64,000 nucleotides of DNA from Macrostomum hystrix (Eukaryota > Animalia > Platyhelminthes): assembly GCA_950097015.1 (NCBI GenBank), contig CATNEN010000025.1, positions 3,534,001-3,598,000 of the forward strand, given 5' to 3'. The notes beneath the pieces were generated by a model that was not told where the DNA came from, did no database searches, and was given only the letters and a program-made list of their open reading frames with translations. Made by a program: the position numbers and the translations under genes. Shown here piece after piece: positions 114 to 22,700 of this stretch (positions are counted from its first letter, which is position 1; each line of letters starts with the position of its first letter).

Positions 114-3100
114 TCTACCAATGGAGGACTGCGGCAGCATGTTCGTCAGCAACAAGGCTCTGGACATCGCCAAGCCCAGCTCCGTGTTCTCCGTGGTAGT
201 CGCCGACTGCTCCGAGTGCACAGTGGGGCTGCTTCGCATGGACCCGATGTGGTTCAATTTTGCCCAGAAGTTTCACAGCTTCGCAGACATCACGGAGCGG
301 GCGACTGTGAAGCTAGAATTCAGTGATTTTGGCAAGGAGTTGTGAGTATTGAATACCATATGTGGGCAGGGCATTTATTCCTGGAAATGTCACTGATGAA
401 AATATTCAACGATCGCTACCTTCGAGATGTAAACTCAGAAAATGAAATTACATTTTTTGTGTAACACTAACTGTATGTACTTTAATAGATTCACTCTCAA
501 TAAATAAGTATTAAATGTTGCATCTCCACTGATTCAATGTGCTCTCAATATGCAGGCTTGATGAGTGTAACTTCAATATTTTCAATAACTTTATATCGCT
601 GAATATCCTGACGATGCTTTGAAAGTTAGTTAGTTCATCGTAAACGTCAGAAAATTTTCATCCAAATTTTGGACCGTCAAGAAAGTCGGTCATTTGGTTT
701 GGGAGCTGTCGTGAGGTAGGCAGTGGGTATTTTTAATACCTCTCCAGTGTCCTTCCCACGGGCAATAGCCTGGTCTTTCTGCTGCTATTGTGCACTGATT
801 TCACTGAGTCCCACCAACCAATCGCATCGCAGCAAGCTCAGCTGCGTTAAGGACGACGGCAAGCTGGCGACGCCAGCCACGTGGAGAACGGCCGCATTCG
901 CTTCGGACACGGACCAGTTTGTGGTGTCCATCGAGGTGCGCAAAGCCGCACTCAGCAACGAGTCGAACATGGTGCACATCCTCCTGAACAACACGACGGT
1001 GCATCAGTTCATCGTGAAATCGACCGCTCTGTCGCGCGGCGGCCAGCAGCAGAAGAGCGGCGAAGTGACGCAGACGGTGCACGAAGGCATCTTCGGTTAC
1101 GTCAGCTGCCCCAAAGGCAAAGCCGGCCGGTCAGCCTTCTACCCGCTGGCCGAGGCCGACAGTCCGATCTACAAGACGTCTGGCTCAAGCGCGCCAGCTG
1201 CGACCAAACCGAAAAAGGACGAAGCTGAAGCCGCTACGAGCGCTGACAGCGATCTGGCGGTTGGAACCCCGCTGCACACGCCGCCGTTTCGCGTCCTCTG
1301 CCACCGGATGTTGCAGGCGGCGTCGGGTTCAACAGTTGGCCGAGTTCGCGAGGCAGTTTCGGCCGAGTTAAAGCGTGTTCGCGACCGCCTCGATGCGGAG
1401 GCCAAGAAGCTGACGAATGCAATCGAGAAGGCCGGCGACGGAGTATTTCTGCAGCAGCTGCGCTGGGCGGAGCTCACCGCCACCGCTGAGCGAATCGAAG
1501 CCTATTTGAAGACTCGACTCGGCGACGACCTGGAAGTGTTCGGCACCGACCAGCTGGCTGAGCTGCGCGCCGCATTGGCGGCCACTTCGCAGGCGGCAGT
1601 TGAAGCCCTGCTGCCTGACCGTCTCTGGCGTATTCGGCAAGTCAAGGAGGCGCTGAAGGTAGCCACCGAGGAGGCCGAGAAGAAGGGCCGAATCCGAGCA
1701 TTGGACTGCCTGGCTGAGGCAGACAAAAAGTACGGCCGATTGCAGCTTGTCGAAGCGTTACAGTGGCTGCACGAGAGAGTGAGTCCTCGGACCTTGGAGA
1801 CCATGCAAGGCGGTGGTCAACTTCGTAGCGAATTCGAACTCGGGAGGTTTTTAGCCTTCATAAATGGCACATACCTTAACCAGCACAAGCCATAGATTTC
1901 ACTGCCATTCAATAGACGGGGAGCCTTAAACCCATGAATGCGAATTTCAAACACCTGCATTTGGAACATAAATGAAATTTACTACTATTATAAGTAGCAA
2001 TTCAGCTTTAGGTAATGTCAAATTTTATGATTTTGCAAAAAATCTATTTGTCCAGGGCACACTAATCTTCCTGCGACACCTGGGCCTGATTGTTACCGAC
2101 CTGCCCTGGTTCTTCGACCTGCTCGAGTCGCTGCCCTTCGATCCGCCTCTGATGGCCGGCCCGCTGCTGCCCGGCCTAGAGCCCGACGCTGGCGTCTGGA
2201 GCGAAGCCACCCTGGAGCAGGCATTTAAGGCGGCCGGAGTAAAGTCCACTGAAGAGGTCAGGGCCGTTGGTGTTGTATTGCTCTGTCTCAATCCCTGTCT
2301 GTCTCCATCCCTGTCTGTCTCCATCCCTGTCTGTCTCCATCCCTGTCTGTCTCCATCCCTGTCTGTCTCCATCCCTGTCTGTCTCCATCCCTGTCAGTCT
2401 CCATCCCTGTCAGTCTCCATCCCTGTCTGTCTCCATCCCTGTCTGTCTCCATCCCTGTCTGTCTCCATCCCTGTCTGTCTCCATCCCTGTCTGTCTCCAT
2501 CCCTGTCTGTCTCCATCCCTGTCTGTCTCCATCCCTGTCTGTCTCCATCCCTGTCTGTCTCCATCCCTGTCTGTCTCCATCCCTGTCAGTCTCCATCCCT
2601 GTCAGTCTCCATCCCATCCCTGTCTGTCTCCATCCCTGTCTGTCTCCATCCCTGTCTGTCTCCATCCCTGTCTGTCTCCATCCCTGTCTGTCTCCATCCC
2701 TGTCTGTCTCCATCCCTGTCTGTCTCCATCCCTGTCTGTCTCCATCCCTGTCTGTCTCCATCCCTGTCTGTCTCCATCCCTGTCTGTCTCCATCCCTGTC
2801 TGTCTCCATCCCTGTCTGTCTCCATCCCTGTCAGTCTCCATCCCTGTCTGTCTCCATCCCTGTCTGTCTCCATCCCTGTCTGTCTCCATCCCTGTCTGTC
2901 TCCATCCCTGTCTGTCTCCATCCCTGTCTGTCTCCATCCCTGTCTGTCTCCATCCCTGTCTGTCTCCATCCCTGTCTGTCTCCATCCCTGTCTGTCTCCA
3001 TCCCTGTCTGTCTCCATCCCTGTCTGTCTCCATCCCTGTCTGTCTCCATCCCTGTCTGTCTCCATCCCTGTCTGTCTCCATCCCTGTCTGTCTCCATCCC

Positions 3101-4725
3101 TGTCTGTCTCCATCCCTGTCTGTCTCCATCCCTGTCTGTCTCCATCCCTGTCTGTCTCCATCCCTGTCTGTCTCCATCCCTGTCTGTCTCCATCCCTGTC
3201 TGTCTCCATCCCTGTCTGTCTCCATCCCTGTCTGTCTCCATCCCTGTCTGTCTCCATCCCTGTCTGTCTCCATCCCTGTCTGTCTCCATCCCTGTCTGTC
3301 TCCATCCCTGTCTGTCTCCATCCCTGTCTGTCTCCATCCCTGTCTGTCTCCATCCCTGTCTGTCTCCATCCCTGTCTGTCTCCATCCCTGTCTGTCTCCA
3401 TCCCTGTCTGTCTCCATCCCTGTCTGTCTCCATCCCTGTCTGTCTCCATCCCTGTCTGTCTCCATCCCTGTCTGTCTCCATCCCTGTCTGTCTCCATCCC
3501 TGTCAGTCTCCATCCCTGTCTGTCTCCATCCCTGTCTGTCTCCATCCCTGTCTGTCTCCATCCCTGTCTGTCTCCATCCCTGTCTGTCTCCATCCCTGTC
3601 TGTCTCCATCCCTGTCTGTCTCCATCCCTGTCTGTCTCCATCCCTGTCTGTCTCCATCCCTGTCTGTCTCCATCCCTGTCTGTCTCCATCCCTGTCTGTC
3701 TCCATCCCTGTCTGTCTCCATCCCTGTCTGTCTCCATCCCTGTCTGTCTCCATCCCTGTCTGTCTCCATCCCTGTCTGTCTCCATCCCTGTCTGTCTCCA
3801 TCCCTGTCTGTCTCCATCCCTGTCTGTCTCCATCCCTGTCTGTCTCCATCCCTGTCTGTCTCCATCCCTGTCTGTCTCCATCCCTGTCTGTCTCCATCCC
3901 TGTCTGTCTCCATCCCTGTCTGTCTCCATCCCTGTCTGTCTCCATCCCTGTCTGTCTCCATCCCTGTCTGTCTCCATCCCTGTCTGTCTCCATCCCTGTC
4001 TGTCTCCATCCCTGTCTGTCTCCATCCCTGTCTGTTTCCATGCCTGTCTGTCTCCATCCCTGTCTGTCTCCAGGCTGGTCTCTACTCCTGTACAACTCCT
4101 GTACATTTCCAGCCGCATCTTCGCCGCATCCTAGCCGACTCCGGCGCCCTCGTTTCCCTGACGCCGCTTCGCCGCTTCGCCGAAGACGAGCGCCAGTTCT
4201 ACAGCAACCTCTACTGCGCGGGCGCCCGACGGAAACGACTCGACTGGCCGCTGCGCAGCCATGCCGACCTGCCCAAGGAGAAGGACGGCAAGTCGAGTGC
4301 AGCCGCAGTCTACAGAATCTACCGGGGCATCACCCGGCCGATCGAGAGGGCGCTGCCCGCCCTGTTCGCCCTGACTAGCCGGCTTGGCCAGCTCTGTCGC
4401 TGTTCAACTGGCGGCGGCTTCGTTCGCAGCCTCTGGGGCGTAGAGATTGTCGTCGCCTACGTCGCCGCGACGGATGACGCCGATGATGATAACCACACTG
4501 ACGAAGACAAAGCCGGGGCGCTGCACCTCACGTCCTGGCTGCCGGTGTCTGCGGCTTCCAATCGACTATCGGAGGCCGAAAAAACCTCCACCCGCCAGCT
4601 GCTGTGGTCCGCCCTGCACCTGTTCACTGACGCCCTGGACTCTCTGCTGCTGCGCCAGGGCTGTCTCGGCGTCCAAATCGAGTCCTCAGCCGACGCCGAC
4701 GCCGGAGAAGACGGAGGAGAGCTGG
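114..4725 (+). CDS. Roco gene, N-terminal part: degenerate ROC-like region followed by a COR domain (exons 114-341, 833-1778, 2056-2256, 4074-4725)
   Basis: The spliced sequence LQLVEALQWLHER|GTLIFLRHLGLIVTDLPWFFDLL fits the COR pattern aL.fLH..G.i.....v..dP.Wl. Exon 4074-4725 (LDWP...VYRIYRG...LWSALHLFTDALDSLL) resembles COR-B. Upstream LEFSDFG and AVGTP resemble the G3 and G4 motifs. Confidence 0.65.
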
Positions 4726-7700
4726 GTTCGTGAGCTAAGCTACTCACATTTTTACTTCTCACAACAGTAGATAGACAGGCTTTTAAATAGAATTAGGTTA
4801 GGCAGGTTTTTTAAATCCTTAAGTTAACCGACAGAACAGTCGCAGCTATTGTGGGGCGCATCTGAAGGCTGGGTACGGCTGTTCAGTCCATAGACTGGGG
4901 GGACGCCACACCCACCTTCAATTACCCAGCTAATGCTGGTGCAGAGATAAGTGTCGTGCTTAAGGACACAAATTGTTCCACTGGAGTCGGGAATCGAACC
5001 CCCGACCTTCAAGACGTAAGTCTGACGCTCTAACCACTAAGCTACAAACTCCTAGTAGTAGAATCCCCAGTTACTCTCATTGTGCAAGCTACTTAATCCC
5101 TCGGATACTAGAATTTCACCAATTACTGAATCCCCTTGTTGCATTATCCCCAAACAGTCACAATATTCCTGAGTGTAAATCAACTTTTTGTCTATGGGCT
5201 ACCCTCCTCCATCCTATGTTAAACAGAGAACCGATCGCTCACCTGTCAGCACACCTGGGACTCGGCTAGTCCCGAGGCCGCGCACGCGCCCAGCGTCTGC
5301 ACTCTGTGCGGCAACTGCGCTCGAGCCGGCGTCGCCTGCCGCTACAACCGCATCGACGGTGGCGGCGGCGTCGGGCGCTGCCTCTGCGCCGCCACAGCGC
5401 AGCGCGCCTGCGCCACCTGCGGCGTCTGCGCCGACTGCGTGGCCGCCGTCTGGGCCCTGCACAGCCGGGTGCACCCAAACAGGGCGCTGCCTGGCTCCAT
5501 CAACTTGTCCTCCGGCGACAGCGGCGGCGAGGCCCGACGAAATAATCGGCTGCGACTTGATGATCAGGTTTGCGATGCTTGGTTTCTGCTGCATCTTCCC
5601 TAACTCCACAATGACTCAAATGAATTATATTCGTGTTGCAGGGTCCCTCGGTGGAGCTGTGTCCGCGCCTGTCACTGCAATCGGCGTCTCGGCCCGAGGT
5701 GACATTCTGTCGCAATCAGCTGATTGCGCAAGACGAGCTGGTTGTGTGCCTCAGAGAGTGAGTTGCAGTTCTGCATTTTGATCGACTCAGATCAGTAGAT
5801 CAGTTTTCTCACTTTTTACGAGGGTCACTCAGAAAACCCTTAGCCTGTACAAGAATATAACCGTATTATCTAAACAACCCAACCCTAACCCTAACCCTAA
5901 CCCTAACCCTAACCCTAACCCTAACCCACACCCTAACCTCCTCCTACGAGAAATTTTAACTAATAAATTATTCTCTTTTCAGCAATTCAACACCCGGTCT
6001 GATCCAGATCTACCCAGAAGTTATTGTTCGAGAGAGCGGTGCGTTCAGCAAGCAAATCCAAACAAATTTCACATTCTAGCAGTATAAAAAATAAATAAAA
6101 ACACGATTTTCAGATTTGAGTTTTAAGTCTAAGCCGCTCTCGTTGGACTATTCGATCGACATTAGCTTTCGACTGTCACCTGTGACTGTGAGTCAGTTAA
6201 CGGGATTCGATTGGTTGACACCCAACCGCTTCATCCAACACCTACTAGCATCATCCAACACCCACTAGCATCATCCAACACCCACTAGCATCATCCAACA
6301 CCCACTAGCATCATCCAACACCCACTAGCATCATCCAACACCCACTAGCATCATCCAACACCCACTAGCATCATCCAACACCCACTAGCATCATCCAACA
6401 CCCACTAGCATCATCCAACACCCACTAGCATCATCCAACACCCACTAGCATCATCCAACACCCACTAGCATCATCCAACACCCACTAGCATCATCCAACA
6501 CCCACTAGCATCATCCAACACCCACTAGCATCATCCAACACCCACTAGCATCATCCAACACCCACTAGCATCATCCAACACCTACTAGCATCATCCAACA
6601 CCCACTAGCATCATCCAACACCCACTAGCATCATCCAACACCCACTAGCATCATCCAACACCCACTAGCATCATCCAACACCCACTAGCATCATCCAACA
6701 CCCACTAGCATCATCCAACACCCACTAGCATCATCCAACACCCACTAGCATCATCCAACACCCACTAGCATCATCCAACACCCACTAGCATCATCCAACA
6801 CCCACCGCCTCGTCCAACACCCAACGCCTCATCCAACACCCAACGCCTCATCCGACACACACCGCCTCATCCAACACCCAACCTCCTCATCCAACACCCA
6901 ACGCCTCATCCGACACACACCGCCTCATCCAACACCCAACCTCCTCATCCAACACCCAACCTCCTCATCCAACACCCAACCTCCTCATCCAACACCCAAC
7001 GCCTCATTCAACACACACCGCCTCACCTCATATGCACCCACCTCATTCCAAACAAACCCACCCGAACCTTCACACTCCCAACTCACTCAAAACCCACCCA
7101 CCTCATCCAACATCCACCACATTCAACACACACCTACCACGCCCCACACACACCCACCTCACTCCAAACACACCCACCTCAACCCACACGCACCCACCTC
7201 ACCCACCCCCGCTCAGCTGGCAGACGAATCGCAGGCTGAGTTACCCTCGGCAGCGGAGCAGACGCCGAGGTTCAGCTACTCGGCCAGGTCCAGCAGCTTC
7301 CTGTGGCAAGATGCCGGCCTGCTTGCCTACGGCTGCATCGGCGAAAACTCCACCCAGCTACCCGTGGCAGTGCTGATTGGCCAGTGTCCGCTAACAAGTG
7401 GCAATGACTCTTTCACAATCAGTTTGTGGCCCTCAACAGCTTTTTTCAAATCTATCTTAGTTTTGTTGGGTTGGATTTCATGTTAAACTCTGTGAATGCC
7501 GCCTTTTTTAGGAATCGTTTCTCGTGGCACCGACGGCAAAATCTCCATCGGCCTGGTGCCGCACGGCTACCACACCGATTCGCAACCCGGCTGGCGATCC
7601 GGCTCTGTTGGTTACCATGGTGACGACGGAGGGTGAGTCTGAGCAATCAGGGTAAAGGTGTTAGAGCCCCAATTTACTGACTCGCGATTATTGATGATTT

Positions 7701-10700
7701 AGAAATCATTACGCTCGTATATCCAAATCTGAACTCAGTTTACCCAAATCTTAACTCAGTTTACCCAAATCTGAACTCAGTTTACCAAAATCTGAACTCA
7801 TTATACCCAAATCCGAACTCAGTTTTACCGAATCTGAACTCAGTTTTTCCAAGTCTCACCTGTTCCACAATTCGCAGAGTCTTTGTCAGCAGCGGAGTGC
7901 CATCAATGAACTCGGAAGCGTTCGCCTCGGAGGACTCGCTGCCCGGAGCCCAGGTCCGCTGCCAGCTAAAGTCGCAGGCCGGCAGAATCCGCTGCGTCTT
8001 CTCGCTGGATCGGCGCGGAGTCGGCGAATTTGTCGACGTCGCCAGTGAAGTGATTGAACCGCCGTCTGGCGGCCTGCTCGCCTGCGTCGGCCTGCACTCG
8101 CCTGGTGAAATCGTACAGCTGGTCGACACCGCCGCCTGGCGGCCGGCGCAACCGCGTCTGGCGGACGGCTCGGCCGAGATTTCGACGGCCGGTTCTCAAG
8201 ACAGCGAAGACAGCATCCTGTTTGACTCTGTCAGATACCAGCTGGCTGACATTTGGCCAAAGCTTGAACTGCCCTGTCAGGTGGGAGCTGGGATTCACCT
8301 GCTAGCCTTCCACTGGGAAGATTCTTGGTTGGGGAAAAGTCTAGATTGGGGAAGAGTCCAGAGTGGGGAAGAGTCTAGATTGGGAAGATTATAGATTGGG
8401 GAAGAGTCTGAACAAAGGCAGTTGACACGCGCTAACAGGTGCAGTCGCTGTCGCTAACGGGTGGAAGAAGTCGCGGCTTCTCCTGTGTGCTCTCCGGCGT
8501 TCTCATGATTGAGCTGCGCAGCTCAGAGGCGACCCAGATTCGAGTGATCAGCAGCGGCCCGGTGCATTGCCGCCTGATGTCCGGGGCTACCGGCGGGACC
8601 GACGTCGGTGCCGGCGCCGGAGCCAGCACGGGCGGAGCCGTTGAATCCTTGCAGGACCTCCTGGAGACGCTCGGTACAGTGAAGGAGGACAATGTGGCGG
8701 TCACGGCTAATCCACCGAGGATTAGGCCTCAGACCGACCCGACAGGACAGCTGGTGAGTGCTTTGGCGAACATCCATTGTTACTCTCCCTCATCTCACTA
8801 GATCTCCCATTGTCACCCCTCCTTCATCCCAAAAATTCCCCCATTTGTCACTCTCCCTCATCTCACTTGATCTCCCATTGTCACTCTCTCTCATCCCACT
8901 AGATCCTCGATTGTCACTCTCTCTCATCCTACTAGATCCTCGATTGTCACTCTCTCTCATCCCACTAGATCCTCGATTGTCACTCTCTCTCATCTCACTA
9001 GATCTCCCATTGTCACTCTCTCTCGTCCCACTAGATCCTCGATTGTCACTCTCTCTCATCCCACTAGATCCTCGATTGTCACTCTCTCTCATCCCAAGAG
9101 ATCCCCTAGTGTCACAACTCTTTATCCCACTAGATCCCTAGTCTCACACTCCGTTATCCCACTATATCCCTAGTGTCACACTCCGTTATCCCACTATATC
9201 CCTAGTGTCACACTCCGTTATCCCACTATATCCCTAGTGTCACACTCCGTTATCCCACTATATCCCTATTGTCCCACTCCGTTATCCCACTAGATCCCTA
9301 GTGTCACACTCCGTTATCCCACTAAATCCCTAGTGTCACACTCCGTTATCCCACTATATCCCTAGTGTCACACTCCGTTATCCCACTAGATCCCTAGTGT
9401 CACACTCCGTTATCCCACTATATCCCTAGTGTCACACTCCGTTATCCCACTATATCCCTAGTGTCACACTCCGTTATCCCACTAGATCCCTAGTCTCACA
9501 CTCCGTTATCCCACTATATCCCTAGTGTCACACTCCGTTATCCCACTATATCCCTAGTGTCACACTCCGTTATCCCACTAAATCCCTAGTGTCACACTCC
9601 GTTATCCCACTATATCCCTAGTGTCACACTCCGTTATCCCACTAGATCCCTAGTGTCACACTCCGTTATCCCACTATATCCCTAGTGTCACACTCCGTTA
9701 TCCCACTATATCCCTATTGTCCCACTCCGTTATCCCACTATATCCCTAGTGTCACACTCCGTTATCCCACTAAATCCCTAGTGTCACACTCCGTTATCCC
9801 ACTATATCCCTAGTGTCACACTCCGTTATCCCACTAGATCCCTAGTGTCACACTCCGTTATCCCACTATATCCCTAGTGTCACACTCCGTTATCCCACTA
9901 AATCCCTAGTGTCACACTCCGTTATCCCACTATATCCCTAGTGTCACACTCCGTTATCCCACTATATCCCTAGTGTCACACTCCGTTATCCCACTATATC
10001 CCTAGTGTCACACGAACCCGAGTTCAACATCAAAGTCCCCATTCCACTCGCAGTTCTCCAAGGCGAAGAGCTCCAAGGCTTCCGTTTTTGCCTTCAAAAC
10101 GAATGCGGGCAAGGTTGAGGAAGATAACGAGGCCAGCAGCAAGGAGGAGCTGGATAAGGACGAGCGCGAGCTGGTAGTTAGCGCCAGTCGGAAGGAAGGC
10201 CATCGGTTTGTCTGCATCCGAGTTCTGGCGGCTCTGCGCGGTGCACTAGCGGCTGCTGCTGCCGCGTCTGGCCGACTATCCGATCTAGCCGAAGCCGACG
10301 AGAGGTTGAAAGGTCACGACAGCGTCGAGGTGGTTATCAGCAGCCTTGGAGGCGAGCAGCAGAAGCACAAGGTGCGCCTGCGGCTGCTGACCGCTAGCGA
10401 AATAGCCGGCGCTGGTTCTCAAATTCAACGCAGCCTGTTTGCGGTGCCCTACACCGAGGACAATGTCCGACAGTCTGGCGGCCTGTGCGACCTGCTTGAG
10501 GTGCTGGATAGCGGCGTACCAATCAACCGGGTGCTCCTGCCGAGGCGCGGCTGGTCGCTGGTGTTTAACAGGAAGGCGATGGCGTCGCTGCACGTGCGGG
10601 CTGAGAATTTCCCGGTGAGTTCAGCTCTGACCAGTTTTTGTCTGACAAGTCAGTTCTTTCTGACAAGTCAGTTCTCTCTGACAAGTCAGTTCTTTCTGAC

Positions 10701-13700
10701 AAGTCAGTTCTCTCTGACAAGTCAGTATTTTCTGACAAGTCAGTTCTCTCTGACAAGTCAGTTCTTTCTGACAAGTCAGTTCTCTCTGACAAGTCAGTTT
10801 TTTCTGACAGGCCAGTTCTGTCAAGCTGTCAATATGTCTAACAATAACAAGTCAACATGAAATGCTTTCTATAATCAAATGCAAGATATTTCTATTGGCA
10901 CCTTTTCTCCACCGCAGTCGTTGAATTTCGCCAGTCGCCTGCAGCGAGATCACTGGGTTCGCTACACTGAGAAGGGTGCCTCCGCGCTCTACAGAGTCAC
11001 CGAAGTTGACAGCAAGGAGGTCAGCATCAGATCTCTTAGTTTGCTCAACGTCACCAAAACTAAGGTCAAGCTGGACTCGCCTGAGCTTGAGTCGCCTCAG
11101 TTATCGGACCTGGCTAGCATGAGCGGTGAGTACACTCGTTCAGATCCTCAAATGTTGAAATCCATCAACGAGTTGACGATTCTTTAATTCTAAAAATACC
11201 TCTGTGAATCGTTGATCCCTTATCTTCAAAATCAATCGATTTTTCATCCCAAATCCCACCCCCACTCGCAGCCGCCTCGCTGGCCAATCCGGAGCTGCCG
11301 CTGCCCCGCTACCCGAGTCCCAACGCCTTGGGCTCCTGGAACAGCCGCTCCCTGCACAGACTCGTCAGCGACGAATCCTTTCTCTATGGCCACTCCTGCC
11401 AGCTCTTCAGGCATCGGACAGCAGTCGGACTGGGCTTGAGCACAGTCGGCTCGCTGCTGTCCGGAGCCAGTAGAACTGGCGCAGCGGGCGGCCTGCTGTG
11501 GGTGTTCCTGCCAGGCCGGGTGCACCGGGCCGGACTGCCAGATCTGGCCAGAGCCGACCAGCTCAGAGCCCACCTGCTGTGCAGCTGCGGCGAGCCGCAC
11601 CTCATTGACTCATCCGGCATCGGCCACTCGATGCCGTCGGCCCTCGAGTGCCACCAGAGTGCTCAATCGGCTGTGCGCCAGCTGTTCAGACACCGGGTGA
11701 GACACTGCGGACTCAGACTTAAACTGAGAGGTCCGGAGTTCGATTCTCAACCGATGGGAAAAAAATTAACAGTAGAACTACCAAAGGCCCCCAGACATTT
11801 CTGCACCTGAACAGAGCAACGCAAGCACCTTGCGAATCTTGAAGTCGCCGGCTCTTCAGACCGTCGAGATATTCGATGGTTCTGGACGAAGGTCGGATTT
11901 TTCCCATAAGCGCTAGTGTATTTCATACACCTCTATAGACGAATTAGCACTGCGCCTCAGTGCGGCCTTGCCAGGCCTTCAAACTTTATCAGCATGTCAC
12001 CCGAATGTGCCTGCATCATCTCCGTCTTCGGTGGTCACCTGCCTTTATCTAGACGGACTGCTGGACCTTCAAGGGCTACAACAGGTGGAACTAGGCCACT
12101 ATGGACACCCTGACGCGAATTTCTCCAATTTCACTGATCAAGCCTAAATATTAGGCGCAGCTCAACCACAGGACACCCTTGTCTAGTCTGTCAACCAATC
12201 AGTCACCACCCAACGTTGTTGGCATTCAGGCGCTGTCAAAAAAATTCTGGGTGGGAGAAATTTCCCCATTTTAGTATTTTTGGTATTTTTGGTTTAGAGC
12301 GAAGCGGCAAAACGGTTTGGTAGTCCTACTGTAAAATCAACATTTGAATAATGCCGCGCAAAAACTGCGTCTGTACCTCACCAACTTAAGCTATCGCCTT
12401 CCTCTCCTCCGCCGCAGCTTTCCGTTCCGTCGTATAAGCTACTGGCTGCCGGAGTCGACTCCGCTGCCCTCGACCAGGAGCTGCTGCAGTCGCGCCTGTG
12501 GATCGAGGCGGCCGTCAGGCGACACCTCCTGGACGGCTACGCGGCCGCCCACTGGCGCTACGTCAGCTCGGTGACGGCCGGCAACGCGGCCCTCTCCGCC
12601 ACCGCCAGCGCAGCCTCGGCTGCCGCCCTCGCAGCCACACCAGCCGGCGACAGCGAGGTGGACAAGCAGCAGCGCCAGCTGGTCCAGCAGCTACTGGCCG
12701 CCTACCTGACTGCGCCGCCAGCTACGGCTGAAGACAAGCTCTACAATGCTGGCCGATCTGCTCCGGCCGCCTGCCGGGCCCACATGCTGTGCCTGACCGA
12801 TGGTGGCCTGGACGAAGCTCTGGAGGCGGACCCGGCTGGAGGTCTGGCCAAGGCTCTGCGGCCGTACGCCGAGTGCGTCCGGACAGCCCGCCTAGTGGCC
12901 TCCAGCCGCCTGACCGACCCGGCCAGCCTATCAGAACTATCCTCACTCGAGTCGCTGGCTCTGGTGAAACTGTCCGGCCTGCGGACTCTCGGCTCGCCTG
13001 GCCAGCTGCCTTCTGGGAGATTGCGCAACCTGCAGGCGAGTCTGACGTCATGACCGTTGCTGGCGGGCAGTCTGAAGGCAGAATAGAGACAAGCAGGAAC
13101 AGGAGATCAAAGAGCAGGGCTGTTTAGGGGTGTGGTAGCGGTAGATCAAAGAGCTGGGCTGTTTAGGGGTGTGGTTGCGGAAGATCAAAGAGCAGGGCTG
13201 TTTAGGGGTGTGGTAGCGGTAGATCAAAGAGCAGGGTGTTTGGGAGGTGTGGTAGCGGTAGATCAAAGAGCAGGGCTGTTTAGGGGTGTGGTAGCGGTAG
13301 ATCAAAGAGCAAGGTGTTTGGGAGGTGTGGTAGCGGTAGATCAAAGAGCAGGGCTGTTTAGGGGTGTGGTAGCGGTAGATCAAAGAGCAGGCCGTTATTA
13401 ATTCACGCAGCGGTACTTTAAGTGACATTAAATGTGATGACAGAAAAGAATGCTGTGCATTATAATGCTGTGCATTACAATCCTAAAGCCTATGATCCCG
13501 TGCTGCAGGTGACGCAATGCGACCTGGAGTCAGCAGACGCAGCGGCCGCCTGTCCCAATCTAAAGAGCATAAGCCTGACTGCCACCCGCCTAACCTCGCT
13601 GCCCGACACCTGGAACTCGGACAGTCCGCTGGAGACCCTCACGATTGACTGCTGCCCGATGTCGGCACTGCCGCCAGGCCTTGGCCGACTGAGGCATCTT

Positions 13701-16700
13701 CGCGTCCTCCGCCTGTCGCAGCTGCCGCTCAGGACGCTGCCGCCGGAGCTGGCGGGCCTTCAGAGCCTGGAGGAGCTGGCTGTTGACGGCGTCGCCTGGC
13801 CGGAGAGCCTCATGGATGGCCTGACCAGCGGCAGTCAGGTTTGTCAGTTTTTACCGAACTTCAATTACTATGAGTAGTCTGGTGGAGACCCAAGGTCCCT
13901 GAGCTCGATTTCGCGGCGAGGCCACTTTCATTTGGGAGCCGCGGAGTGAAAGGTTGTGGTTTGTCGTAAAATTTGCGTCCTTGAGGGACAATCTCAAAGG
14001 CAGAGTGAAGTGTACACTGCCTTACGATGGGAATTCGGGGCAAATGTACACACCTGTGTGAGCGTATGCCTGCTTACAGTATCTGTGTTTGTGTGTGCTC
14101 AGGAGTCAGCGGAATTGGGTTGAAATTGACTCCTCGCTGGCTGCGGGTCTAGTGTCACCAAATGATGTTACTATGAGTAGTCCGTCATGCACTTAGAAGA
14201 ACTCAGTCTTAAAAGTCCTTTCGTCTTGTTTGAGTGTTTTAGTCTCACAAAAGTTCCATAGAAACTCATTAAACGAGTTCACATATCAACAATATTCCGA
14301 TTCATTTTCAAAGGTCTCTGACGGTCACAAATTTCTCACTGCCCTGCGTGGCGTTTCCATGGCAACCGGACCAGATCAACAGGCGCAGCAGCAGCGCTAT
14401 TTCAGCGCCCTGCTGACCGACGCTCAGGTGGCCAGCATCGCCCAGTCTGAGTCGCTGCCTGCCACCCTCGCACGACTGGTGCTCGAGCTGCCACGGCTTG
14501 GCGTTGATGCGCCACCAGAGGACGAATTTGGCGGCCTGCCGCCCTGCCTATTTGAGCTGGCCGGACTCACAACACTGCGCCTTACCTACCAGGTGAGCGG
14601 TAGCAGCATCTAGGCGTATGACCTACCAGTACAGGGTGTTTTGGGGGTGGGGCAGCGGTAGATCAAAGAGCAGGGTGTTTTGGGGGTGGGGCAGCGGTAG
14701 ATCAAAGAGCAGGGTGTTTTGGGGGTGGGGTAGTCTTAGATCAAAGAGCAGGGTGTTTTGGGGGTGGGGTAGCCTTAGATCAAAGAGCAGGGTGTTTTGG
14801 GGGTGGGGTAGCCTTAGATCAAAGAGCAGGGTGTTTTGGGGGTGGGGTAGCCTTAGATCAAAGAGCAGGGTGTTTTGGGGGTGGGGTAGCGGTAGATCAA
14901 AGAGCATGGCGATATTGATTCACGCAGCGGTACTTTAAGTGTGTTGATAGGAAAGAATTCTGGGCATTGTAATCTAAAATCATATAGATAATAATCTGCT
15001 GCAGGTGATACAATGTGGTGGTACCAGTTCAGGTGTATGACGATTGAGCTCGGTATGGTCTATCATTAGCCGGAATTCAAAAAGAAAAAAGTAAATTGGA
15101 CGTTCCCGCCTTTCCCAGGCCATTCGCCGCATCCCCGACGCGATCGTCCGACTGGGCCGGCTGAAGGTGCTGCAGTTGAGCAGCAATCCGCTGCTCGAGT
15201 CACTGTCGCCTCGGCTGTCTGAGCTGCCCGCCCTAAGTCACGTGGACGTCAACCGGTGCCCGGCTCTCCGCACGCCACCGTTGGAGGTGGTGCAGAGAGG
15301 CTCGGCCGCTCTGCTGAGCTACCTGAAGTTTCTGGCATCAGATCAGGTTGGGCTGAATGATTCTCTAAACCCTGGAACTTAAACTTATATTTCTATTATT
15401 TCTATTCCGTTCGCTTCGTTCAGAATCTTCACTACACATCGAAGCCTCAGCATGGAACCTTCAGAACATAGGCTTCTTTCTCCAGTCCCTGAAGCTTAAC
15501 ATAAAACCCAGACTGAATGAACTTTAGCCATTAGCAATAAGCTTTGCAATAATGACTGACTCCCTGATTAAAAAATGCCCAGGTGGAGTGCAAGCGCACC
15601 AAACTGATGTTTGTCGGCCTCGGCGGTGTTGGCAAGACCAGCCTGCTGCGCGCCCTGCGAAATCCGGACAACCGCACCATTCCAGTTGGCGTCGAGGAGA
15701 TCACAGACGGCATCGACATCGGCGACTGGACCATCGACATTGGCGACGGTAGCCAGCCGTTAAACTTCAGCACCTGGGATTTTGCCGGCCAGAAGGTGTA
15801 TTACAACACTCACCAGTTCTTCTTAACTCACCGCGCTGTGTACCTGCTGCTGTACACTGTCCGGACTGGCTATGAACACGCCGGCCTGGACTTCTGGCTT
15901 AGCTCCATCAGCAGCCACGCGCCCAACGCGCCAATCATTGTGATTGGCACGCATTCAGATCAGGTAAATAATGGCGTCATTACACTAGCACCGCCAGTTG
16001 TGTAAGTCTGTTTACCTTAGCAACGTCCCAAGAAATATTCCCACAAGGGTCAAGAAGGACGGGAAAGTACATTTCTTTGAAAAATTCTTGGTGCTACGGA
16101 GATAGGAAATATTTCACCTCTTTTGCACAAATGTAGTGAATTCGTTTAATAGGAAATAAAAGTGTTTAAAGGGCTAATCTTTTATTATTAACTTTTTATT
16201 TATAGCTTCATCGATTTCTGCCAAACTATATTTGGGAAAACCAAATGAAGATGACATTTTTCCGTTTCTGTACATGCCCTCCCCTGTTCCCAGGGGGAAA
16301 TATCGTGATCTTTCTACTGTTAGGCTCTCGAATCAAATAAACTAGCATTTAGTTTTCTCCATTCTCAGATCAGTGATCATGAGATAACTAGAAACTAATG
16401 TGTGGGCAAATCTTATGACCATCTGCTCACATTTCCTATATGGCCCACTGCCAGTTGTCACTGGCTAGTTTTTTTCGACTTGAACGTTTAAGATCTGAAA
16501 AATTCGTTAGAGCAACATGATGTAGGTTAATTATATCAAAATGTCTCATTCCCAAATGAGGAGGTTGCAGCCTAGTAGTTAGAGCGTTGGACTCAAGACT
16601 TCAAGGTCGGAGGTTCGATTCCCGACTCCACTGGCAAAATGTTTTTCCTTTAGCAAGACTCTGCATTTCATCAGTTCACCCAGCTACTAAATTGGTACCA

Positions 16701-19700
16701 AAATTAGCTGGGGTAATTGAGGGTGGGTGTGGCGTCCCCCCAGTTCATGGACTGAACAGCCGTACGCAGCCTTCAGGTGCGCCGCGCAATAGCTGCGGCT
16801 GTGCTGTCGGCTGCACATCTGACCCGATTGGGGCTGGTGTATCCAATAATAATAATTATAATTATTATTGCATTCCCAAAACAACAGGTAGAGAAGGGCG
16901 ACACGCTGCCGCAGGACACGTACAGGTCGCGCTATCCCCAGATACACAGCTTCCACCAGGTGTCTTCGCACACCGGCGCGGGCATATCCGAACTGCGCAG
17001 AGAGCTAGTCCAGGTGGCCCTCAACCAGCCCTACATGAACGAGAGCGTGCCGAGGCTGTTCCTGGACTTCGAGGAGCGCCTAATGGAGAAGCGAACTCGG
17101 GAGCGCCAGAACATCCTGGACTGGGGCGAGGTGAGCAGCCTGGCCCAGCAACACGGCCTCTACGAGGAGAAGCACGTGCGCCAGGCCGTGAACTTTCTTA
17201 ACGACATCGGCTCCATCCAGTACTTCGACACTGAGTTCTTGCGCCAGAAGGTGGTCATCAATCCGAAGTGGATTGTCGACGTCATGGCCTGCGTGGTTAG
17301 CGTGAAGAATTCACCGATTCAGGTGCGTCTGCACTTTTTCAATTAGTATGTACATTCTTTCGCCTTTGTCAGCGAGAATGTGCGTTCGCTCTCTGATCAC
17401 TTATCAGCTAGAAGTGATAGACCATCAGCTAGAATGTACATTCGCCCTCTAACCATTTATCAGCTAGAATGTACATTCGCCCTCTAACTATTTATCAGCT
17501 AGAATGTACGAGTACCTTCGCTCTTTGACGATTTATCGGCCGGAATGTACATTAGCTCCTAGACCATTTATCGGCCGGAATGTACATTAGCTTCTAGACA
17601 TTTATTGCTGGAATGTACATTAGCTTCTAGACCATTTATCGGCCGGAATGTACATTAACTCCTAGACCATTTATCGGCCGGAATGTACATTAACTCCTAG
17701 ACCATTTATCGGCCGGAATGTACATTAACTCCTAGACCATGTATCGGCCGGAATGTACATTAGCTTCTTGTCCATTTATCGTCTGAAAAGTATTTTCCTT
17801 CTTGGGACTAATTTTCATTTATCCTGGCCTTCAGCCTTAATTGATCTAACTAAAAAAACACTTCAAACTTCTTGCAGAAAGGCCAGCTAAAAAAGTCCGA
17901 CGTGCCAGTTGTTTGGGCAAAGTTCGACCCCGCTCTGCACGACTGGCTGCTCAAGCTCACTGAAGCCTTTGACCTGACCTACCCGATGCAGGGCGACTGC
18001 AATATGGTGCCATGTCTGCTGCCAGAGGAAACACCAAATGTGAGACACGTCTCTATGACCAGATAGAGAGACACGTCTCTATGACCAGATAGAGAGACAC
18101 GTCTCTATGACCAGATAGAGAGACACGTCTCTATGACCAGATAGAGAGACACGTCTCTATGACCAGATTAACCCGCCCAATGACCAGATAGAGACCTGTC
18201 TCTCACCCCGCAATGCCGAATTTGCAGTACGTGTTTCCGCCTCCAATCGCCGACGGCAGCGACTGCAGTCTGGCCCGATTCATCTACCAGTTCGAGTACC
18301 TGCCAGCCGGTCTGTTCAACCGGGCCCAGGTGCGGCTGTTCGAGTTCACTGATAGCACCACCGTGTGGAAGCGGGGCTCCCTATTGCGAAAGAACAACCA
18401 CGAGGCGGTCATTGTTATGGACGAGTGAGTTTTTAATTTCCAAGTCTATTTCTATAATAGTTCCGCGCTTTACAATGAACTAACTTTCAAAGATGTCCGA
18501 TGTCAGCATCGTCGGGATATTCAGAGATTTTTGTCGAATACCCTGGCGACAACAAAATGCCAATGTTTTGTGATTCTGGAAGTTTTTGTATCGAATAGAC
18601 TGGAAAATTTTAGGCCGTGTTCTGCATTTTCAAGGCGATTGGTTGACAATTTTAGGAGAAGCATAAAATAGAAAAAATGTGAATATTTGAACAACCCGTG
18701 GTCTACTGTTAAAAGCCACACAGGACGCTCTATAGGGATATGAAGAGGAAAGCGATATAGATCTAGATCCAATCTGTTAGCTTGAAGACACTTTTTATCT
18801 CCCTGACCGTCCATCGCAGCAAGCAGCGCCTGAGCATCTCAGTGTTCGGCCCCAAGCCTGAGAATGTCCTGTTTATGATTCGCGACGTCATCGACGGCCT
18901 CATCCAGGAGACATTCCAGGGTGTCCACTACGATGAGATTCTGCCCTGCCCGGAGTGCCTAAACTCGCCCGGGGCCACCGAGGCCGAGATAAGCCTCATC
19001 CGCGTGGCAACAGTTCGCAAAGCCAGCTCCAAGCAGGTGGCGTTCCTTCAGTGCTCCCAGGAGTTCCACATCCTCAACCTCAGCCAGCTGCTGGCCGCCG
19101 TGCCTCCAGTCAGCGTTGCCGACTTCGATCATCAGCTGGAGCAGAGCCTGCTGCAGCTGCGTCGGGTCAGGCTCGAGATGAACCGCGACCTCTGCCTGCT
19201 GTTCTGCGTCTCTGACTATCCAGACGGACCGCGCGGCGAGATGGCCGGCCTAGTCAGCCCGGATATTGTGCTGCAGAAGATGGAGGCAGAGGGATTCACT
19301 TGGTGAGCCTGATCCCAACCAGCCTGATCCCAACCAGCCTGATCCCAACCAGCCTGATCCCAACCAACCTGATCCTCAACCAGCCTGATCCCAACCAGCC
19401 TGATCCCAACCAGCCTGATCCCAACCAGCCTGATCCCAACCAGCCTGATCCCAACCAGCCTGATCCCAACCAACCTGATCCTCAACCAGCCTGATCCCAA
19501 CCAGCCTGATCCCAACCAGCCTGATCCCAACCAGCCTGATCCCAACCAGCCTGATCCCAACCAGCCTGATCCCAACCAACCTGATCCTCAACCAGCCTGA
19601 TCCCAACCAGCCTGATCCCAACCAGCCTGATCCCAACCAGCCTGATCCCAACCAGCCTGATCCCAACCAGCCTGATCCCAACCAACCTGATCCTCAACCA

Positions 19701-22700
19701 GCCTGATCCCAACCAGCCTGATCCCAACCAACCTGATCCCAACCAGCCTGATCCCAACCAGCCTGATCCCAACCAGCCTGATCCCAACCAACCTGATCCC
19801 CAACTAGCCTGATCCCCAACTAGCCTGATCCCAACCAGCCTGATCCCCAACCAGCATGATACCAACCAGCCTGATCCCAACCAGCCTGATCCCAACCAGC
19901 CTGATCCCAACCAGCCTGATCCCCAACCAGCCTGATCCCCAACCAGTCTGATCCCCAACCAGTCTGATCCCCCAGATGATTCCAAAACAGCCTGATCCCC
20001 AACCAGCCTGATCCCAACCAGCCTGATCCCCAACCAGCCTGATCCCCAACCAGCCTGATCCCCAACCAGCCTGATCCCCAACCAGCCTGATCCCCATCCA
20101 GAGCCTAGTCCTCACGCCTTTGCTTTCAGCTACCCAATCGATCAGGACCTGCTCGAGGACCGGCTGCTTCAGGTGAAGGACTGCAAGGTGCTGCTGGTAT
20201 TTTTGTCGAAGGCCTTCACAGAGGATGAGGCGTGCCGCGGCATGTTCATCAACGCCAAGAACATCCTGCGCAAGCGGATGATCTTCATCAGCGTCGGCGC
20301 AGACAAGTCCTGGCGGGACAGCAACGACGTCGCTTTCCTAGTTGGCGCCGACAAATACATTGACTTCACCGCCGGCAAGAAGGATGTCCTGGCGTCGAAA
20401 TACGCCGAACTAATCGTCGACGTGAAGTCAGCGTTGGCCACGGCTCGCCAGTCGGACTCGGAGCTGCTGGGCAAGGACGTGTTCATCTCCTACTGCTGGG
20501 CCAACTCACATGACGCCGTTTCCAAGGGAACCCGGAACGGTGTGCTGGGCTGTCCGGACAGCGATCCCAGGAGGGTGGCCGCCAGGCTGCAGGACAGGGG
20601 CATCCACTGCTGGCTGGATGTCAAGGATATCGGCGCGGTGAGGCTTGGTTTGGTGGCGTTGTTTCTACTGCTCGAAGAATTTGTATTCTTGAGCACTGAT
20701 TCGTGCTCAGGTATAATCAGAAAAATATTCGCACGTGGGACTCAGATTCAGTCCACATTGAGATTGAGCACAAATGAGATTGAGCACACATTGAGATTGA
20801 GCACACATTGAGATTGAGCACACATTGAGATTAAGCACACATTCGCACCGACTGCAGCGCAGCCTATTCGAGGACATCAGTGACGGCCTGCGTCAGTGCT
20901 CTGTTGTGCTGGCATTCGCCAGTAACGAGTACCAGCGCAGCGCCAACTGCATGATGGAGTACCGCTTCGCGTCTCGCAACTTGCGCAAGCCCCTAGTGAT
21001 GGCCATTGTGGGCGAGTCGTTGGACTTCAAAACCCAGGAGCTTGGCATGCTCAGCATGGGCCTAGACGAATTCGACTTCCGCCACGAGGTCAAGGAGTCG
21101 CACTTCGACCGAATGGTTGGACGGCTCAAGCAGCTGCTGGAGGAGCAGAAGAAGAAGAAGAAAGAGCAGGAGGTCGAGGCACAGGCCGGCAAGTCGACCG
21201 CAAAGACGGCAACGGCTGCCAACACAGCCGGGCCGCAGAGCAGGCGGGGCCTTTTCAGGGAGGAGGCGGAGCTGGCACAGAGGCGATTCCTGAAGCAGTT
21301 TCAGCAGCACCACGGAATGCCGCGCCTTCTGGTGTTGGACTTCGCTGATGTGGCTGCATTCAACGAAAGCTCAGCTAGCGAAGAAGACAGAGACATGCAG
21401 CTGGTGAGGCTGGGTGGGGTTGGGGGACAGGCAGCTGGTGAGGCTGGGTGGGGTTGGGGGACAGGCAGCTGGTGAGGCTGGGTGGGGTTGGGGGACAGGC
21501 AGCTGGTGAGGCTGGGTGGGGTTGGGGGACAGGCAGCTGGTGAGGCTGGGTGGGGTTGGGGGACAGGCAGCTGGTGAGGCTGGGTGGGGTTGGGGGACAG
21601 GCAGCTGGTGAGGCTGGGTGGGGTTGGGGGACAGGAAGCTGGTGAGGCTGGGTGGGGTTGGGGGACAGGAAGCTGGTGAGGCTGGGTGGGTTTGGGGGAC
21701 AGGCAGCTGGTGAGGCTGGGTGGGGTTGGGGGACAGGCAGCTGGTGAGGCTGGGTGGGGTTGGGGGACAGACAGCTGGTGAGGCTGAGGGGGGCAGATAA
21801 AGTTCTATATTTTCCTTAAGGTTTATTCTAATTAAATAATTACCGCATTTAATTGCAGGATGTCATCAAAGTTCTGTGCGAAAACGAGCAGGTAAACAAT
21901 TGTTCTCAACCTACTATGCTACTTGTATCCACAAACAGTAGTATGAATTGGGACAGATTTCAAATTCGAACAGGGCTGGCACGTGCATGGACCGGGCGTT
22001 GAGTTACACGGCATGTCATCGGACACCCGAGCTCTGCTGCTATCTTCCACCTCCGCTTACCTGTTGAGAATCTACGCACTGCTGCAGACTAGCGGCATTC
22101 CATTGAATTGCCTGGACGGACGGCGCGGAGGCGTCGCTGGAGGCGGCGCTGGAGGCGGCGGTGAAGGCGGGGTTGGCGCTGGAGGCAGCGTTGGAGCAGC
22201 AAAGATAGGCGATGGCGTTGGAGCTGACGACAATGGCGAGGACTTCATGCAGCAGATTCGCTCGGAGGCATCGGCAACTTCGCAGTCATTCGCGGAAGCT
22301 TATCAGAACATGCAGAACCTCTTCCTGCGGCACAACGGTGAGGCAACTGTCACTCTCCGTGACCTTCAGTCACTCTCCGTGACCTTCAGTCACTCTCCGT
22401 GACCTTCAGTCACTCTCCGTGACCTTCAGTCACTCTCCGTGACCTTCAGTCACTCTCCGTGACCTTCAGTCACTATCCGTGACCTTCAGTCACTCTCCGT
22501 GACCTTCAGTCACTCTCCGTGACCTTCAGTCACTCTCCGTGACCTTCAGTCACTCTCCGTGACCTTCAGTCACTCTCCGTGACCTTCAGTCACTATCCGT
22601 GACCTTCAGTCACTCTCCGTGACCTTCAGTCACTCTCCGTGACCTTCAGTCACTCTCCGTGACCTTCAGTCACTCTCCGTGACCTTCAGTCACTCTCCGT

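What the first reader, a model, noticed from the sequence alone, without database searches (positions are those of the whole stretch)
114..4725. N-terminal pseudo-ROC-COR: a possible intramolecular partner for the active ROC-COR
Seen: at the position matching the active P-loop (LMFVGLGGVGKTSLLR), the first module reads VVVADCSECTVGLLR (~193-240) with no GKT. It still has G3-like LEFSDFG, G4-like AVGTP and a recognisable COR. Known: Roco proteins are regulated by COR-mediated dimerisation. Inference: a catalytically dead ROC-COR could pair in cis with the live one as a built-in pseudo-heterodimer switch.
Basis: inference. Interest (0 to 1): 0.75.

Follow-up and report, generated by a model that had tools for sequence, protein, structure and literature searches.

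The report
Degenerate Roc-COR remnant with beta-sandwich insert

Summary
The window is Macrostomum lignano. Spliced RNA contigs confirm exons 114-341, 833-1778, 2056-2256 and 4113-4729, and show at least 1178 nt of transcript upstream of the window.

- VVVADC...GLLR and LEFSDFG (D-x-G, not DxxG) lie in a stretch whose paralogue model in the ESM Atlas matches only ConA/galectin-like beta-sandwiches.
- AVGTP lies in a linker.
- No Pfam, BLASTP or profile test links 114-1334 to Roc.

A profile I built from 66 prokaryotic Roco proteins matches 1452-1778, 2056-2256 and 4113-4169 as the Roc C-terminal end plus COR-A (E 1.8e-5; 0 of 50 decoys). Paralogue models carry a beta5/G4-like strand (VVIVVLNDFD, E 0.005) upstream of the sandwich, and no Walker A.

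So a degenerate Roc-COR is likely real, but split by an insertion of about 450 residues. Its G1-G4 part would lie outside the window.

COR-B, the part that makes Roco dimers, is not detectable, so cis pairing stays speculative. One transcript with the live LRR-Roc-COR-TIR half is not shown.

Earlier scan notes flagged dead N-terminal Roc modules in paralogues on other pieces of this genome.

The parts
114..341 (+). Exon (not the first one): first part of a predicted ConA/galectin-like beta-sandwich.
   Evidence: Spliced contigs in 4 runs, joint 341>833 with GT..AG, and 1178 nt of contig upstream of 114. The ESM Atlas model of paralogue P0006, residues 93-275, matches 10 of 10 beta-sandwich clusters at TM 0.54-0.60. 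No Roc signal.
342..832 (+). Intron 1.
   Evidence: Joint 341>833 in all four runs.
833..1172 (+). Exon 2, first about 113 residues: second part of the beta-sandwich (up to ...SPIY).
   Evidence: Corresponds to P0006 residues 168-275 of the Atlas match. Roc profile E 0.095.
1173..1334 (+). Low-complexity, acidic, Ala/Ser-rich linker.
   Evidence: Read from the sequence. No family match.
1335..1451 (+). Helix-prone stretch (VGRVREAVSAELKRVRDRLDAEAKKLTNAIEKAG...) of unassigned role.
   Evidence: Read from the sequence. No Pfam hit of any kind at E<=10, so no dynein stalk/MTBD hit either.
1452..1610 (+). Roc C-terminal end (alpha4/beta6/alpha5 equivalent), degenerate and without a G5 motif.
   Evidence: hhalign against the 66-member prokaryotic Roc-COR profile. 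Exon 2 residues 207-314 match template columns 139-238, E 0.0022. With the paralogue rows added: E 1.8e-5, template 141-314, score 42.4 against decoys 13.6+-2.5, maximum 20.7. The live exon 16756-17343 matches the same columns, 139-271.
1611..1778 (+). COR-A, N-terminal part (LPDRLW ... ALQWLHER).
   Evidence: Same alignments. An in-register match to the live COR-A exon scores 16.4, reached by 0 of 40 shuffles.
1779..2055 (+). Intron 2.
   Evidence: Joint 1778>2056 in three runs.
2056..2256 (+). Exon 3: COR-A, middle part (GTLIFLRHLGLIVTDLPWFFDLL...). The best conserved piece, 88% identical to the paralogue.
2257..4112 (+). Intron 3, filled by a 16-bp tandem repeat (2282-4072, 112 copies).
   Evidence: The loose end after 2256 reads CCGCATCTTCGCC..., which is window 4113. 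Tandem repeat from TRF.
4113..4169 (+). Exon 4, first 19 residues: end of the detectable COR-A match (PHLRRILADSGALVSLTPL).
4170..4729 (+). Rest of exon 4, about 186 residues of unresolved fold. It sits where COR-B should be, and two rival registers can be drawn by eye, but nothing is significant.
   Evidence: hhalign E 0.54. Exon 4 alone: 9 of 25 decoys score as high. Donor gtgagc at 4730. 63-73% identical to paralogues.
13422..21472 (+). Context only: the live half. LRR (13422-13874, 15095-15379), Roc with GGVGKT (15568-16002), COR-A (16756-17343, 17854-18063), COR-B (18192-18425, 18767-19303), two TIR_2 domains (20059-20808, 20801-21472).
   Evidence: Pfam. hhalign controls from E 8e-35 to 7e-8, colinear on the profile.

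Best explanation
Window 114-4729 holds four internal, expressed exons of a large Macrostomum lignano gene. I read them as the back end of a degenerate Roc-COR module split by a large insertion.

Order along the protein:
1. Upstream of the window (inferred from paralogue models only): a Roc-like core. Only the beta5/G4 strand is still recognisable (VVIVVLNDFD, NKxD turned into NDFD), and there is no Walker A.
2. An insertion of about 450 residues: a linker, a ConA/galectin-like beta-sandwich (window 114-341 and 833-1172), an acidic linker and a helix (1173-1451). It sits between G4 and alpha4/beta6, the loop where Rho GTPases carry their insert helix.
3. The Roc C-terminal end (1452-1610).
4. 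A complete COR-A (1611-1778, 2056-2256, 4113-4169).
5. A tail of about 186 residues (4170-4729) where COR-B should be but cannot be recognised.

Shown: Predicted only: the sandwich fold.

Inferred: the module binds no nucleotide and serves as a rigid scaffold that presents the inserted beta-sandwich, a likely ligand- or protein-binding surface, to the rest of the protein. It may use the usual Roc/COR-A packing surface to dock onto other domains.
For: - Exons and the upstream transcript.
- Organism and paralogues: only M. lignano gene models match exon 2 among 1.84 billion representatives.
- Profile controls: the prokaryotic Roc-COR profile comes, and five members checked by Pfam are LRR-Roc-COR proteins. 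It scores the live exons from E 8e-35 to 7e-8, colinear.
- N-module against that profile: A3 gives E 6.3e-4, score 33.7, against decoys 14.4+-2.7. The extended sub-alignment gives Prob 78%, E 1.8e-5, 165 columns, template 141-314, 0 of 50 decoys.
- The window's exon 2 alone gives E 0.0022 on template 139-238, the same columns as the live exon 16756-17343.
- Only 6 of 117 + strand ORF pieces in the first 22 kb hit the profile at E<0.02: the five live exons and this one.
- Paralogue upstream strand PDQVVIVVLNDFDRAVGHI matches template 123-141, E 0.005, 0 of 60 decoys. On the template it abuts the exon 2 match.
- Beta-sandwich: 10 of 10 structural neighbours of the Atlas model (galectin, GH43_C2, 3-keto-disaccharide hydrolase, GH59_C, phage Dit), TM 0.54-0.60.
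- No GxxxxGK[ST] in any paralogue model.
- UniRef names P0002 and P0005 'COR domain-containing protein'.
Against: - Current Pfam sees neither Roc nor COR in the module, even at E<=10 on clean paralogue pieces.
- Both of my AlphaFold jobs failed (pLDDT 27.8 and 39.4), so no fold is confirmed by a confident model.
- The Atlas model of P0006 has a whole-protein pLDDT of only 0.39.
- The upstream G4-strand match is short (19 columns) and comes from paralogue gene models with frameshifts and retained introns, not from this gene.
- The rest of the presumed Roc core is not significant: the P-loop-like SSASVVKT region is matched by 13 of 60 decoys, and the full-length alignment gives E 0.015, reached by 1 of 40 decoys.
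- COR-B was not found.
- The direct comparison with the live module is not significant.
Confidence: 0.6

Rival explanations
1. One reading: exons 1-2 (193-1271) are themselves the dead Roc domain, with VVVADCSECTVGLLR in place of the P-loop, LEFSDFG as G3 and AVGTP as G4, followed by COR.
For: The strings exist. The spacing from SDFG to LLNNTT (paralogues VLNKAT) is about 58 residues, close to the G3-G4 spacing of Ras. That is my own reading.
Against: - No similarity to Roc by BLASTP, Smith-Waterman, Pfam or the Roc profile.
- The Atlas model of the equivalent paralogue stretch is a beta-sandwich in 10 of 10 neighbours.
- The sequence has many strand-like stretches and no room for alpha2/alpha3.
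- LEFSDFG is D-x-G, and AVGTP is unrelated to NKxD.
- The Roc C-terminal end is found 280 residues further on, directly before COR-A.
Confidence: 0.04
2. Cis pseudo-heterodimer. This is a functional rival to 'scaffold that presents the sandwich'. The degenerate Roc-COR pairs within one chain with the live Roc-COR and mimics the COR-mediated dimer of Roco GTPases, so that the live Roc is regulated without a second protomer.
For: Roco proteins dimerise mainly through COR, and Roc-Roc contacts contribute (PMC6337361). A Roc-COR remnant is present N-terminal of the live one. Paralogue gene models chain the module to 11.6 kb on the same strand. Pseudo-GTPase domains in tandem with a GTPase domain exist in p190RhoGAP (PMC5593906).
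Against: [quoted passage not shown]
- One transcript that spans both modules is not shown by my data.
- No structural model was obtained.
- The two modules are too diverged to show even pairwise similarity.
Confidence: 0.15
3. No Roc-COR ancestry at all: 1335-4729 is an unrelated helical region and the profile match is chance or driven by composition.
For: Pfam is silent. hhalign probability is only 78% and the query profile is shallow (Neff about 1.3). PDB sequence searches are empty.
Against: - The score is 42.4 against column-shuffled decoys of 13.6+-2.5.
- Every conserved COR-A motif lines up in order: P..W, Is..ey..iC, L..yLHdlG, iIL.p.W, G.f....l.
- The match starts in the Roc C-terminal end, as in real Roc-COR junctions.
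- It lies in a gene region that paralogue models tie towards a true Roco.
- UniRef independently names two paralogue models COR proteins.
Confidence: 0.1
4. The N-terminal exons belong to a separate gene from the live LRR-Roc-COR-TIR gene.
For: My RNA evidence ends about 100 nt after exon 4. The stretch 11.6-13.4 kb is not bridged.
Against: The strand is the same. Paralogue models overlap in the exon at 5226-5567 and run on to about 11.6 kb. Earlier scan notes on a paralogue report one expressed gene (s1-319803, not checked here).
Confidence: 0.1

Closest known systems
Canonical Roc-COR tandem of Roco proteins (Chlorobium tepidum Roco, LRRK2, MFHAS1; Pfam Roc PF08477, COR-A PF16095, COR-B PF25497)
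   Same: A Roc C-terminal end runs straight into a COR-A with all its conserved motifs in order. It lies in a gene region that also encodes a true LRR-Roc-COR.
   Different: No P-loop. G4 reads NDFD, in paralogues only. There is no G5. An insertion of about 450 residues sits inside the Roc. COR-B is undetectable. The Pfam models do not reach it.
PseudoGTPase domains of p190RhoGAP (PMC5593906)
   Same: GTPase-like domains that have lost the nucleotide-binding motifs sit in the same polypeptide as a GTPase domain, and sequence models had overlooked them.
   Different: Those are Ras-like domains without COR and without a large insert. There the fold and the lack of nucleotide binding were shown by crystal structures and binding assays; here nothing is shown experimentally.
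Rho insert helix of Rho-family GTPases (established knowledge, not tested here)
   Same: The extra element is inserted after the G4 strand and before alpha4/beta6, a permissive site of the G-domain.
   Different: The Rho insert is about 13 residues. Here the insert is about 450 residues and holds a whole predicted beta-sandwich domain.
Bacterial LRR-Roc-COR-TIR proteins (L039 Cyclobacteriaceae, L056 Nostoc paludosum; L081 is similar but without a COR-B hit)
   Same: The domain order is that of the live half of this gene.
   Different: The prokaryotic ORFs I inspected show one Roc-COR each. None was seen with a second, degenerate Roc-COR or a sandwich insert, but I did not search for one systematically.

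Membership tests
Roco (Roc-COR tandem), applied to the N-terminal module only | Roc G-domain with a P-loop, GxxxxGK[ST] | tested here: not met
   There is none in window 114-4729 and none in the paralogue models P0001-P0006, which include about 330 residues upstream of the exon-1 equivalent. The upstream exons of this gene itself are outside the window and could not be read.
Roco (Roc-COR tandem), applied to the N-terminal module only | Recognisable Roc fold or sequence | tested here: inconclusive
   Pfam Roc/Ras gives no hit. The Roc C-terminal end is matched as part of the E 1.8e-5 alignment. A beta5/G4-like strand in the paralogue gives E 0.005. The rest of the core is not significant.
Roco (Roc-COR tandem), applied to the N-terminal module only | COR-A directly after Roc | tested here: met
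   Profile-profile comparison gives E 1.8e-5, 165 columns, 0 of 50 decoys. A3 gives E 6.3e-4. It is not met by the Pfam COR-A HMM.
Roco (Roc-COR tandem), applied to the N-terminal module only | COR-B (C-terminal half of COR, the dimer interface) | tested here: inconclusive
   hhalign of exon 4 with paralogues gives E 0.54. Exon 4 alone is matched by 9 of 25 decoys. No other ORF piece between 4.7 and 13.4 kb hits the profile. The query profile is shallow, so a diverged COR-B is not excluded.
Roco, applied to the live half at 13.4-21.5 kb | Roc with an intact P-loop, followed by COR-A and COR-B | tested here: met
   Pfam Roc E 2.5e-21 with GGVGKT, COR-A 1.3e-15, COR-B 9.4e-15.
ConA-like lectin/glucanase beta-sandwich (galectin, SPRY and relatives) | Jelly-roll beta-sandwich fold | tested here: inconclusive
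   The Atlas model of paralogue P0006 residues 93-275 has 10 of 10 neighbours of this fold class, TM 0.54-0.60. That model's whole-protein pLDDT is 0.39. My AlphaFold job failed. There is no Pfam hit. There is no similarity to the gene's own SPRY-like exons.
PseudoGTPase | GTPase fold without nucleotide binding or hydrolysis | not testable with these tools
   This needs a structure and nucleotide-binding assays. Only the loss of motifs is seen, and only in paralogue models.

The most novel reading that the evidence does not exclude
A single-chain 'GTPase activated by dimerisation'. The dead Roc-COR carries a ligand-binding beta-sandwich inside its G-domain and docks in cis onto the live Roc-COR. 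Ligand binding to the sandwich would then set the GTPase cycle of the live Roc and, through it, the assembly of the two C-terminal TIR domains. This would be a Roco-based innate-immune sensor built as an internal pseudo-heterodimer.
Probability: 0.1. Interest if true: 0.75.

Novelty: new variant of a known kind. Interest (0 to 1): 0.45.

Why it matters
As far as I know, described Roco proteins have one Roc-COR tandem, and how COR-mediated dimerisation controls the GTPase is still debated (PMC6337361).

A natural protein with a second, dead Roc-COR in the same chain, with a whole binding domain inserted into its G-domain, would be a ready-made test of whether a Roc-COR unit can act purely as a structural partner. 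That would parallel pseudokinase/kinase pairs and the pseudoGTPase domains of p190RhoGAP.

It also shows that family HMMs miss such remnants, and that a purpose-built profile can recover them.

The claim is limited. The key upstream exons are outside the window, COR-B is missing or unrecognisable, and the family is so far confined to Macrostomum paralogues.

Tried and rejected
- **Exon joining.** All searches used single exons by reference, or database gene models of the paralogue as spliced proxies. In the alignments the window exons are separate rows.
- **AlphaFold2.** Both jobs failed: beta region plus upstream (A2) pLDDT 27.8, and COR-like region (A3) pLDDT 39.4. Foldseek on the second model gave only noise. 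I ran no fold search on the first.
- **Pfam.** Nothing for the N-module on all exon pieces and clean paralogue pieces, down to E<=10.
- **PDB sequence and profile searches.** Nothing.
- **Word-index protein search with exon 2.** Nothing; the search is limited by length.
- **Atlas feature search.** Nothing usable.
- **Pairwise comparison with the live module.** BLASTP, Smith-Waterman with shuffles and hhalign were not significant, except for a weak in-register COR-A hit.
- **Chou-Fasman and hydrophobic-moment profile.** Uninformative: it fails on the live Roc control.
- **The search for related loci with the live Roc exon.** Nothing. I replaced it with a WDFGGQ[ED] pattern scan.
- **The look-up of encoding contigs for P0002.** Not on record.
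- **P-loop-like SSASVVKT and G3-like GEGGQ in the paralogue upstream.** Rejected as evidence. They are not above decoys and lie in stretches that look frameshifted.
- **Dynein MTBD-like module (scan note s1-319806, about a paralogue).** Not reproduced here. Pfam shows nothing, and only about 40-90 helix-prone residues lie between the linker and the Roc-end match. No fold could be obtained, so this stays untested.
- **UniRef names of the paralogue models** (SHR-BD, calpain, TNFR-Cys, PIH1_CS). I treat them as unreliable. Only the twice-given 'COR' name counts, and only as weak support.
Full report
**What the window is.** The window is eukaryotic, with many intronic minisatellites. The only database relatives of the N-terminal exons are UniRef gene models of Macrostomum lignano. 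Pfam confirms the live half of the gene on the + strand:
- LRR at 13422-13874 and 15095-15379.
- Roc at 15568-16002 (E 2.5e-21), with GGVGKT at 15622.
- COR-A at 16756-17343 and 17854-18063.
- COR-B at 18192-18425 and 18767-19303.
- Two TIR_2 domains at 20059-21472.

**The observation.** Four runs of one study hold about 59% of the sampled words of 60-2250. Their contigs skip GT..AG introns, so they behave as RNA. They give exons 114-341, 833-1778 and 2056-2256, and the loose end after 2256 reads the sequence at 4113. Exon 4 runs to the donor at 4730.

Intron 3 holds a 16-bp repeat in 112 copies, which explains the long false ORFs. Exon 114-341 is internal. One contig has 1178 nt upstream of 114, and the loose end reads through in frame (..ISNNWI|LPMEDC..). 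The ATG at 121 is therefore not the start, and about 390 residues or more lie outside the window.

**Is 193-1271 a dead Roc?** Every test says no.
- BLASTP of the exons against the live Roc and COR-A exons finds nothing.
- Smith-Waterman with shuffles gives z = -0.13 for exon 1 against Roc.
- Pfam finds no Roc, Ras or COR, even at E<=10.
- LEFSDFG is D-x-G rather than DxxG, and AVGTP shares nothing with NKxD.

The sequence reads as a run of short strand-like segments. The ESM Atlas holds the paralogue model P0006 letter for letter. Residues 93-275 of the Atlas's own model correspond to window exon 1 plus the first ~113 residues of exon 2 (66-80% identical to the paralogue models). All ten of their listed structural neighbours are ConA/galectin-type beta-sandwiches, at TM 0.54-0.60 over 136-159 residues: galectin, GH43_C2, 3-keto-disaccharide hydrolase, GH59_C and phage Dit. 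The caveat is that the whole-protein pLDDT of that model is 0.39. My own AlphaFold job on this region failed, with pLDDT 27.8.

**Is there a COR?** Pfam does not see one. My second AlphaFold job failed (pLDDT 39.4), and Foldseek on it gave noise. A weak but in-register hhalign hit linked QLVEALQWLHERG..IVTDLPWFFDLL to the live HVRQAVNFLNDIG..VVINPKWIVDVM, with score 16.4 reached by 0 of 40 shuffles.

To gain sensitivity I built a family profile.
- A scan of prokaryotic genomes for the Roc G3 motif WDFGGQ[ED] gave 120 loci.
- 66 ORFs with enough flanking sequence were aligned; their median identity is 24%.
- Five members checked by Pfam are LRR-Roc-COR proteins, four of them with COR-B as well and three with a C-terminal TIR.

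The profile scores the live exons from E 8e-35 to 7e-8, in colinear order. Against it:
- The N-module alignment A3 gives E 6.3e-4 on the COR-A columns. The score is 33.7 against column-shuffled decoys of 14.4+-2.7, maximum 22.5.
- A sub-alignment that starts 60 residues earlier holds window exon 2 residues 196-315, exon 3, the start of exon 4 and the paralogue rows, each window exon as its own row. It gives Prob 78%, E 1.8e-5 and score 42.4 over 165 columns, template 141-314. Decoys score 13.6+-2.5, maximum 20.7.
- That span is the Roc C-terminal end (alpha4/beta6/alpha5) running straight into COR-A. The live exon 16756-17343 matches the same columns.
- The window's exon 2 alone gives E 0.0022. 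It is the only ORF piece outside the live exons, among 117 tested, to pass E<0.02.

COR-B is not recovered. Exon 4 with paralogues gives E 0.54, and no later exon supplies it.

**Where is the rest of the Roc?** It is not in the window. In the paralogue models, the clean stretch PDQVVIVVLNDFDRAVGHI lies upstream of the exon-1 equivalent. It matches the beta5/G4 columns 123-141 (NKxD read as NDFD) at E 0.005, reached by 0 of 60 decoys. On the template this abuts the exon 2 match.

The simplest reading is one Roc-like domain split after G4 by about 450 residues: linker, sandwich, linker, helix. Rho GTPases carry their insert helix in the same loop (established knowledge).

Further upstream nothing is significant. 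The models are frameshifted there, so I discard the tempting SSASVVKT and GEGGQ strings. No paralogue model has GxxxxGK[ST].

**One protein with the live half?** My RNA evidence ends about 100 nt after exon 4. Paralogue models overlap in the Cys-rich exon at 5226-5567. They run on through SPRY-like exons to about 11.6 kb of the window. The last 1.8 kb to the LRR exons is not bridged. Scan note s1-319803 reports one expressed gene for a paralogue; I did not check this.

**Mechanism.**
- Shown: expressed exons, COR-A homology preceded by a Roc end, and no GTPase motifs in the window.
- Predicted: the sandwich fold.
- Inferred: a nucleotide-dead Roc-COR-A scaffold that displays an inserted binding domain.

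**Novelty.** I know of no described Roco protein with two Roc-COR units, and I found none. The nearest precedent for dead G-domains beside a live one is p190RhoGAP (PMC5593906). Earlier notes of this scan (s1-319803, s1-258471, s1-319845) already flagged dead N-terminal Roc modules in paralogues on other pieces of this genome, so this is not a first sighting. What is new here is the corrected anatomy.

Noticed in passing
window 2282-4072: A 16-bp tandem repeat (TCTGTCTCCATCCCTG, about 112 copies, 98% match) fills intron 3. It creates stop-free ORFs of 500-800 codons in several frames on both strands, all artefacts.
   Followed up: yes
window 5226-5567 and 5639-5758: The next exons encode a Cys-rich stretch (CTLCGNC...CATCGVCADC) that is 75-90% identical to paralogue models. 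UniRef calls one model 'TNFR-Cys domain-containing'. Pfam gives nothing convincing. It may be a zinc-binding or disulphide-rich module between the dead Roc-COR and the SPRY-like exons.
   Followed up: partly
window 7271-7633 and 7879-8283: SPRY-like exons (..GKISIGLVPHGYHTDSQPGWRSGSVGYHGDDGG..). Paralogue model P0007 scores Pfam SPRY at E 0.004, below the curated threshold. They show no detectable similarity to the N-terminal beta-sandwich.
   Followed up: partly
L039:4426-7038, L056:3354-6608, L081:3699-6758: These bacterial proteins (Cyclobacteriaceae, Nostoc paludosum and one more) have LRR-Roc-COR followed by TIR_2, the same domain order as the live half of the flatworm gene (L081 without a COR-B hit).
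   Followed up: no
window 681-732 (intron 1): Very short contigs (31-43 nt, one mismatch) at depth up to about 160 lie here in all four RNA runs, far above the exons. They may be a fragment of an abundant RNA or of a repeat encoded elsewhere. Rfam shows nothing.
   Followed up: partly
window 4983-5051 (- strand): A tRNA-like element between exon 4 and the next exon (Rfam tRNA 31.9 bits, E 9e-4), not called by ARAGORN. Similar peptide-like translations recur near 16.6 kb and 32.2 kb, which suggests a tRNA-derived repeat family.
   Followed up: partly
P0001-P0009 (UniRef M. lignano models): All paralogue gene models carry frameshifts or retained introns, and their automatic names disagree (COR, SHR-BD, calpain, SPRY, TNFR-Cys, PIH1_CS). 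One giant gene appears to be split into several overlapping fragments of 600-1000 residues in that annotation.
   Followed up: partly
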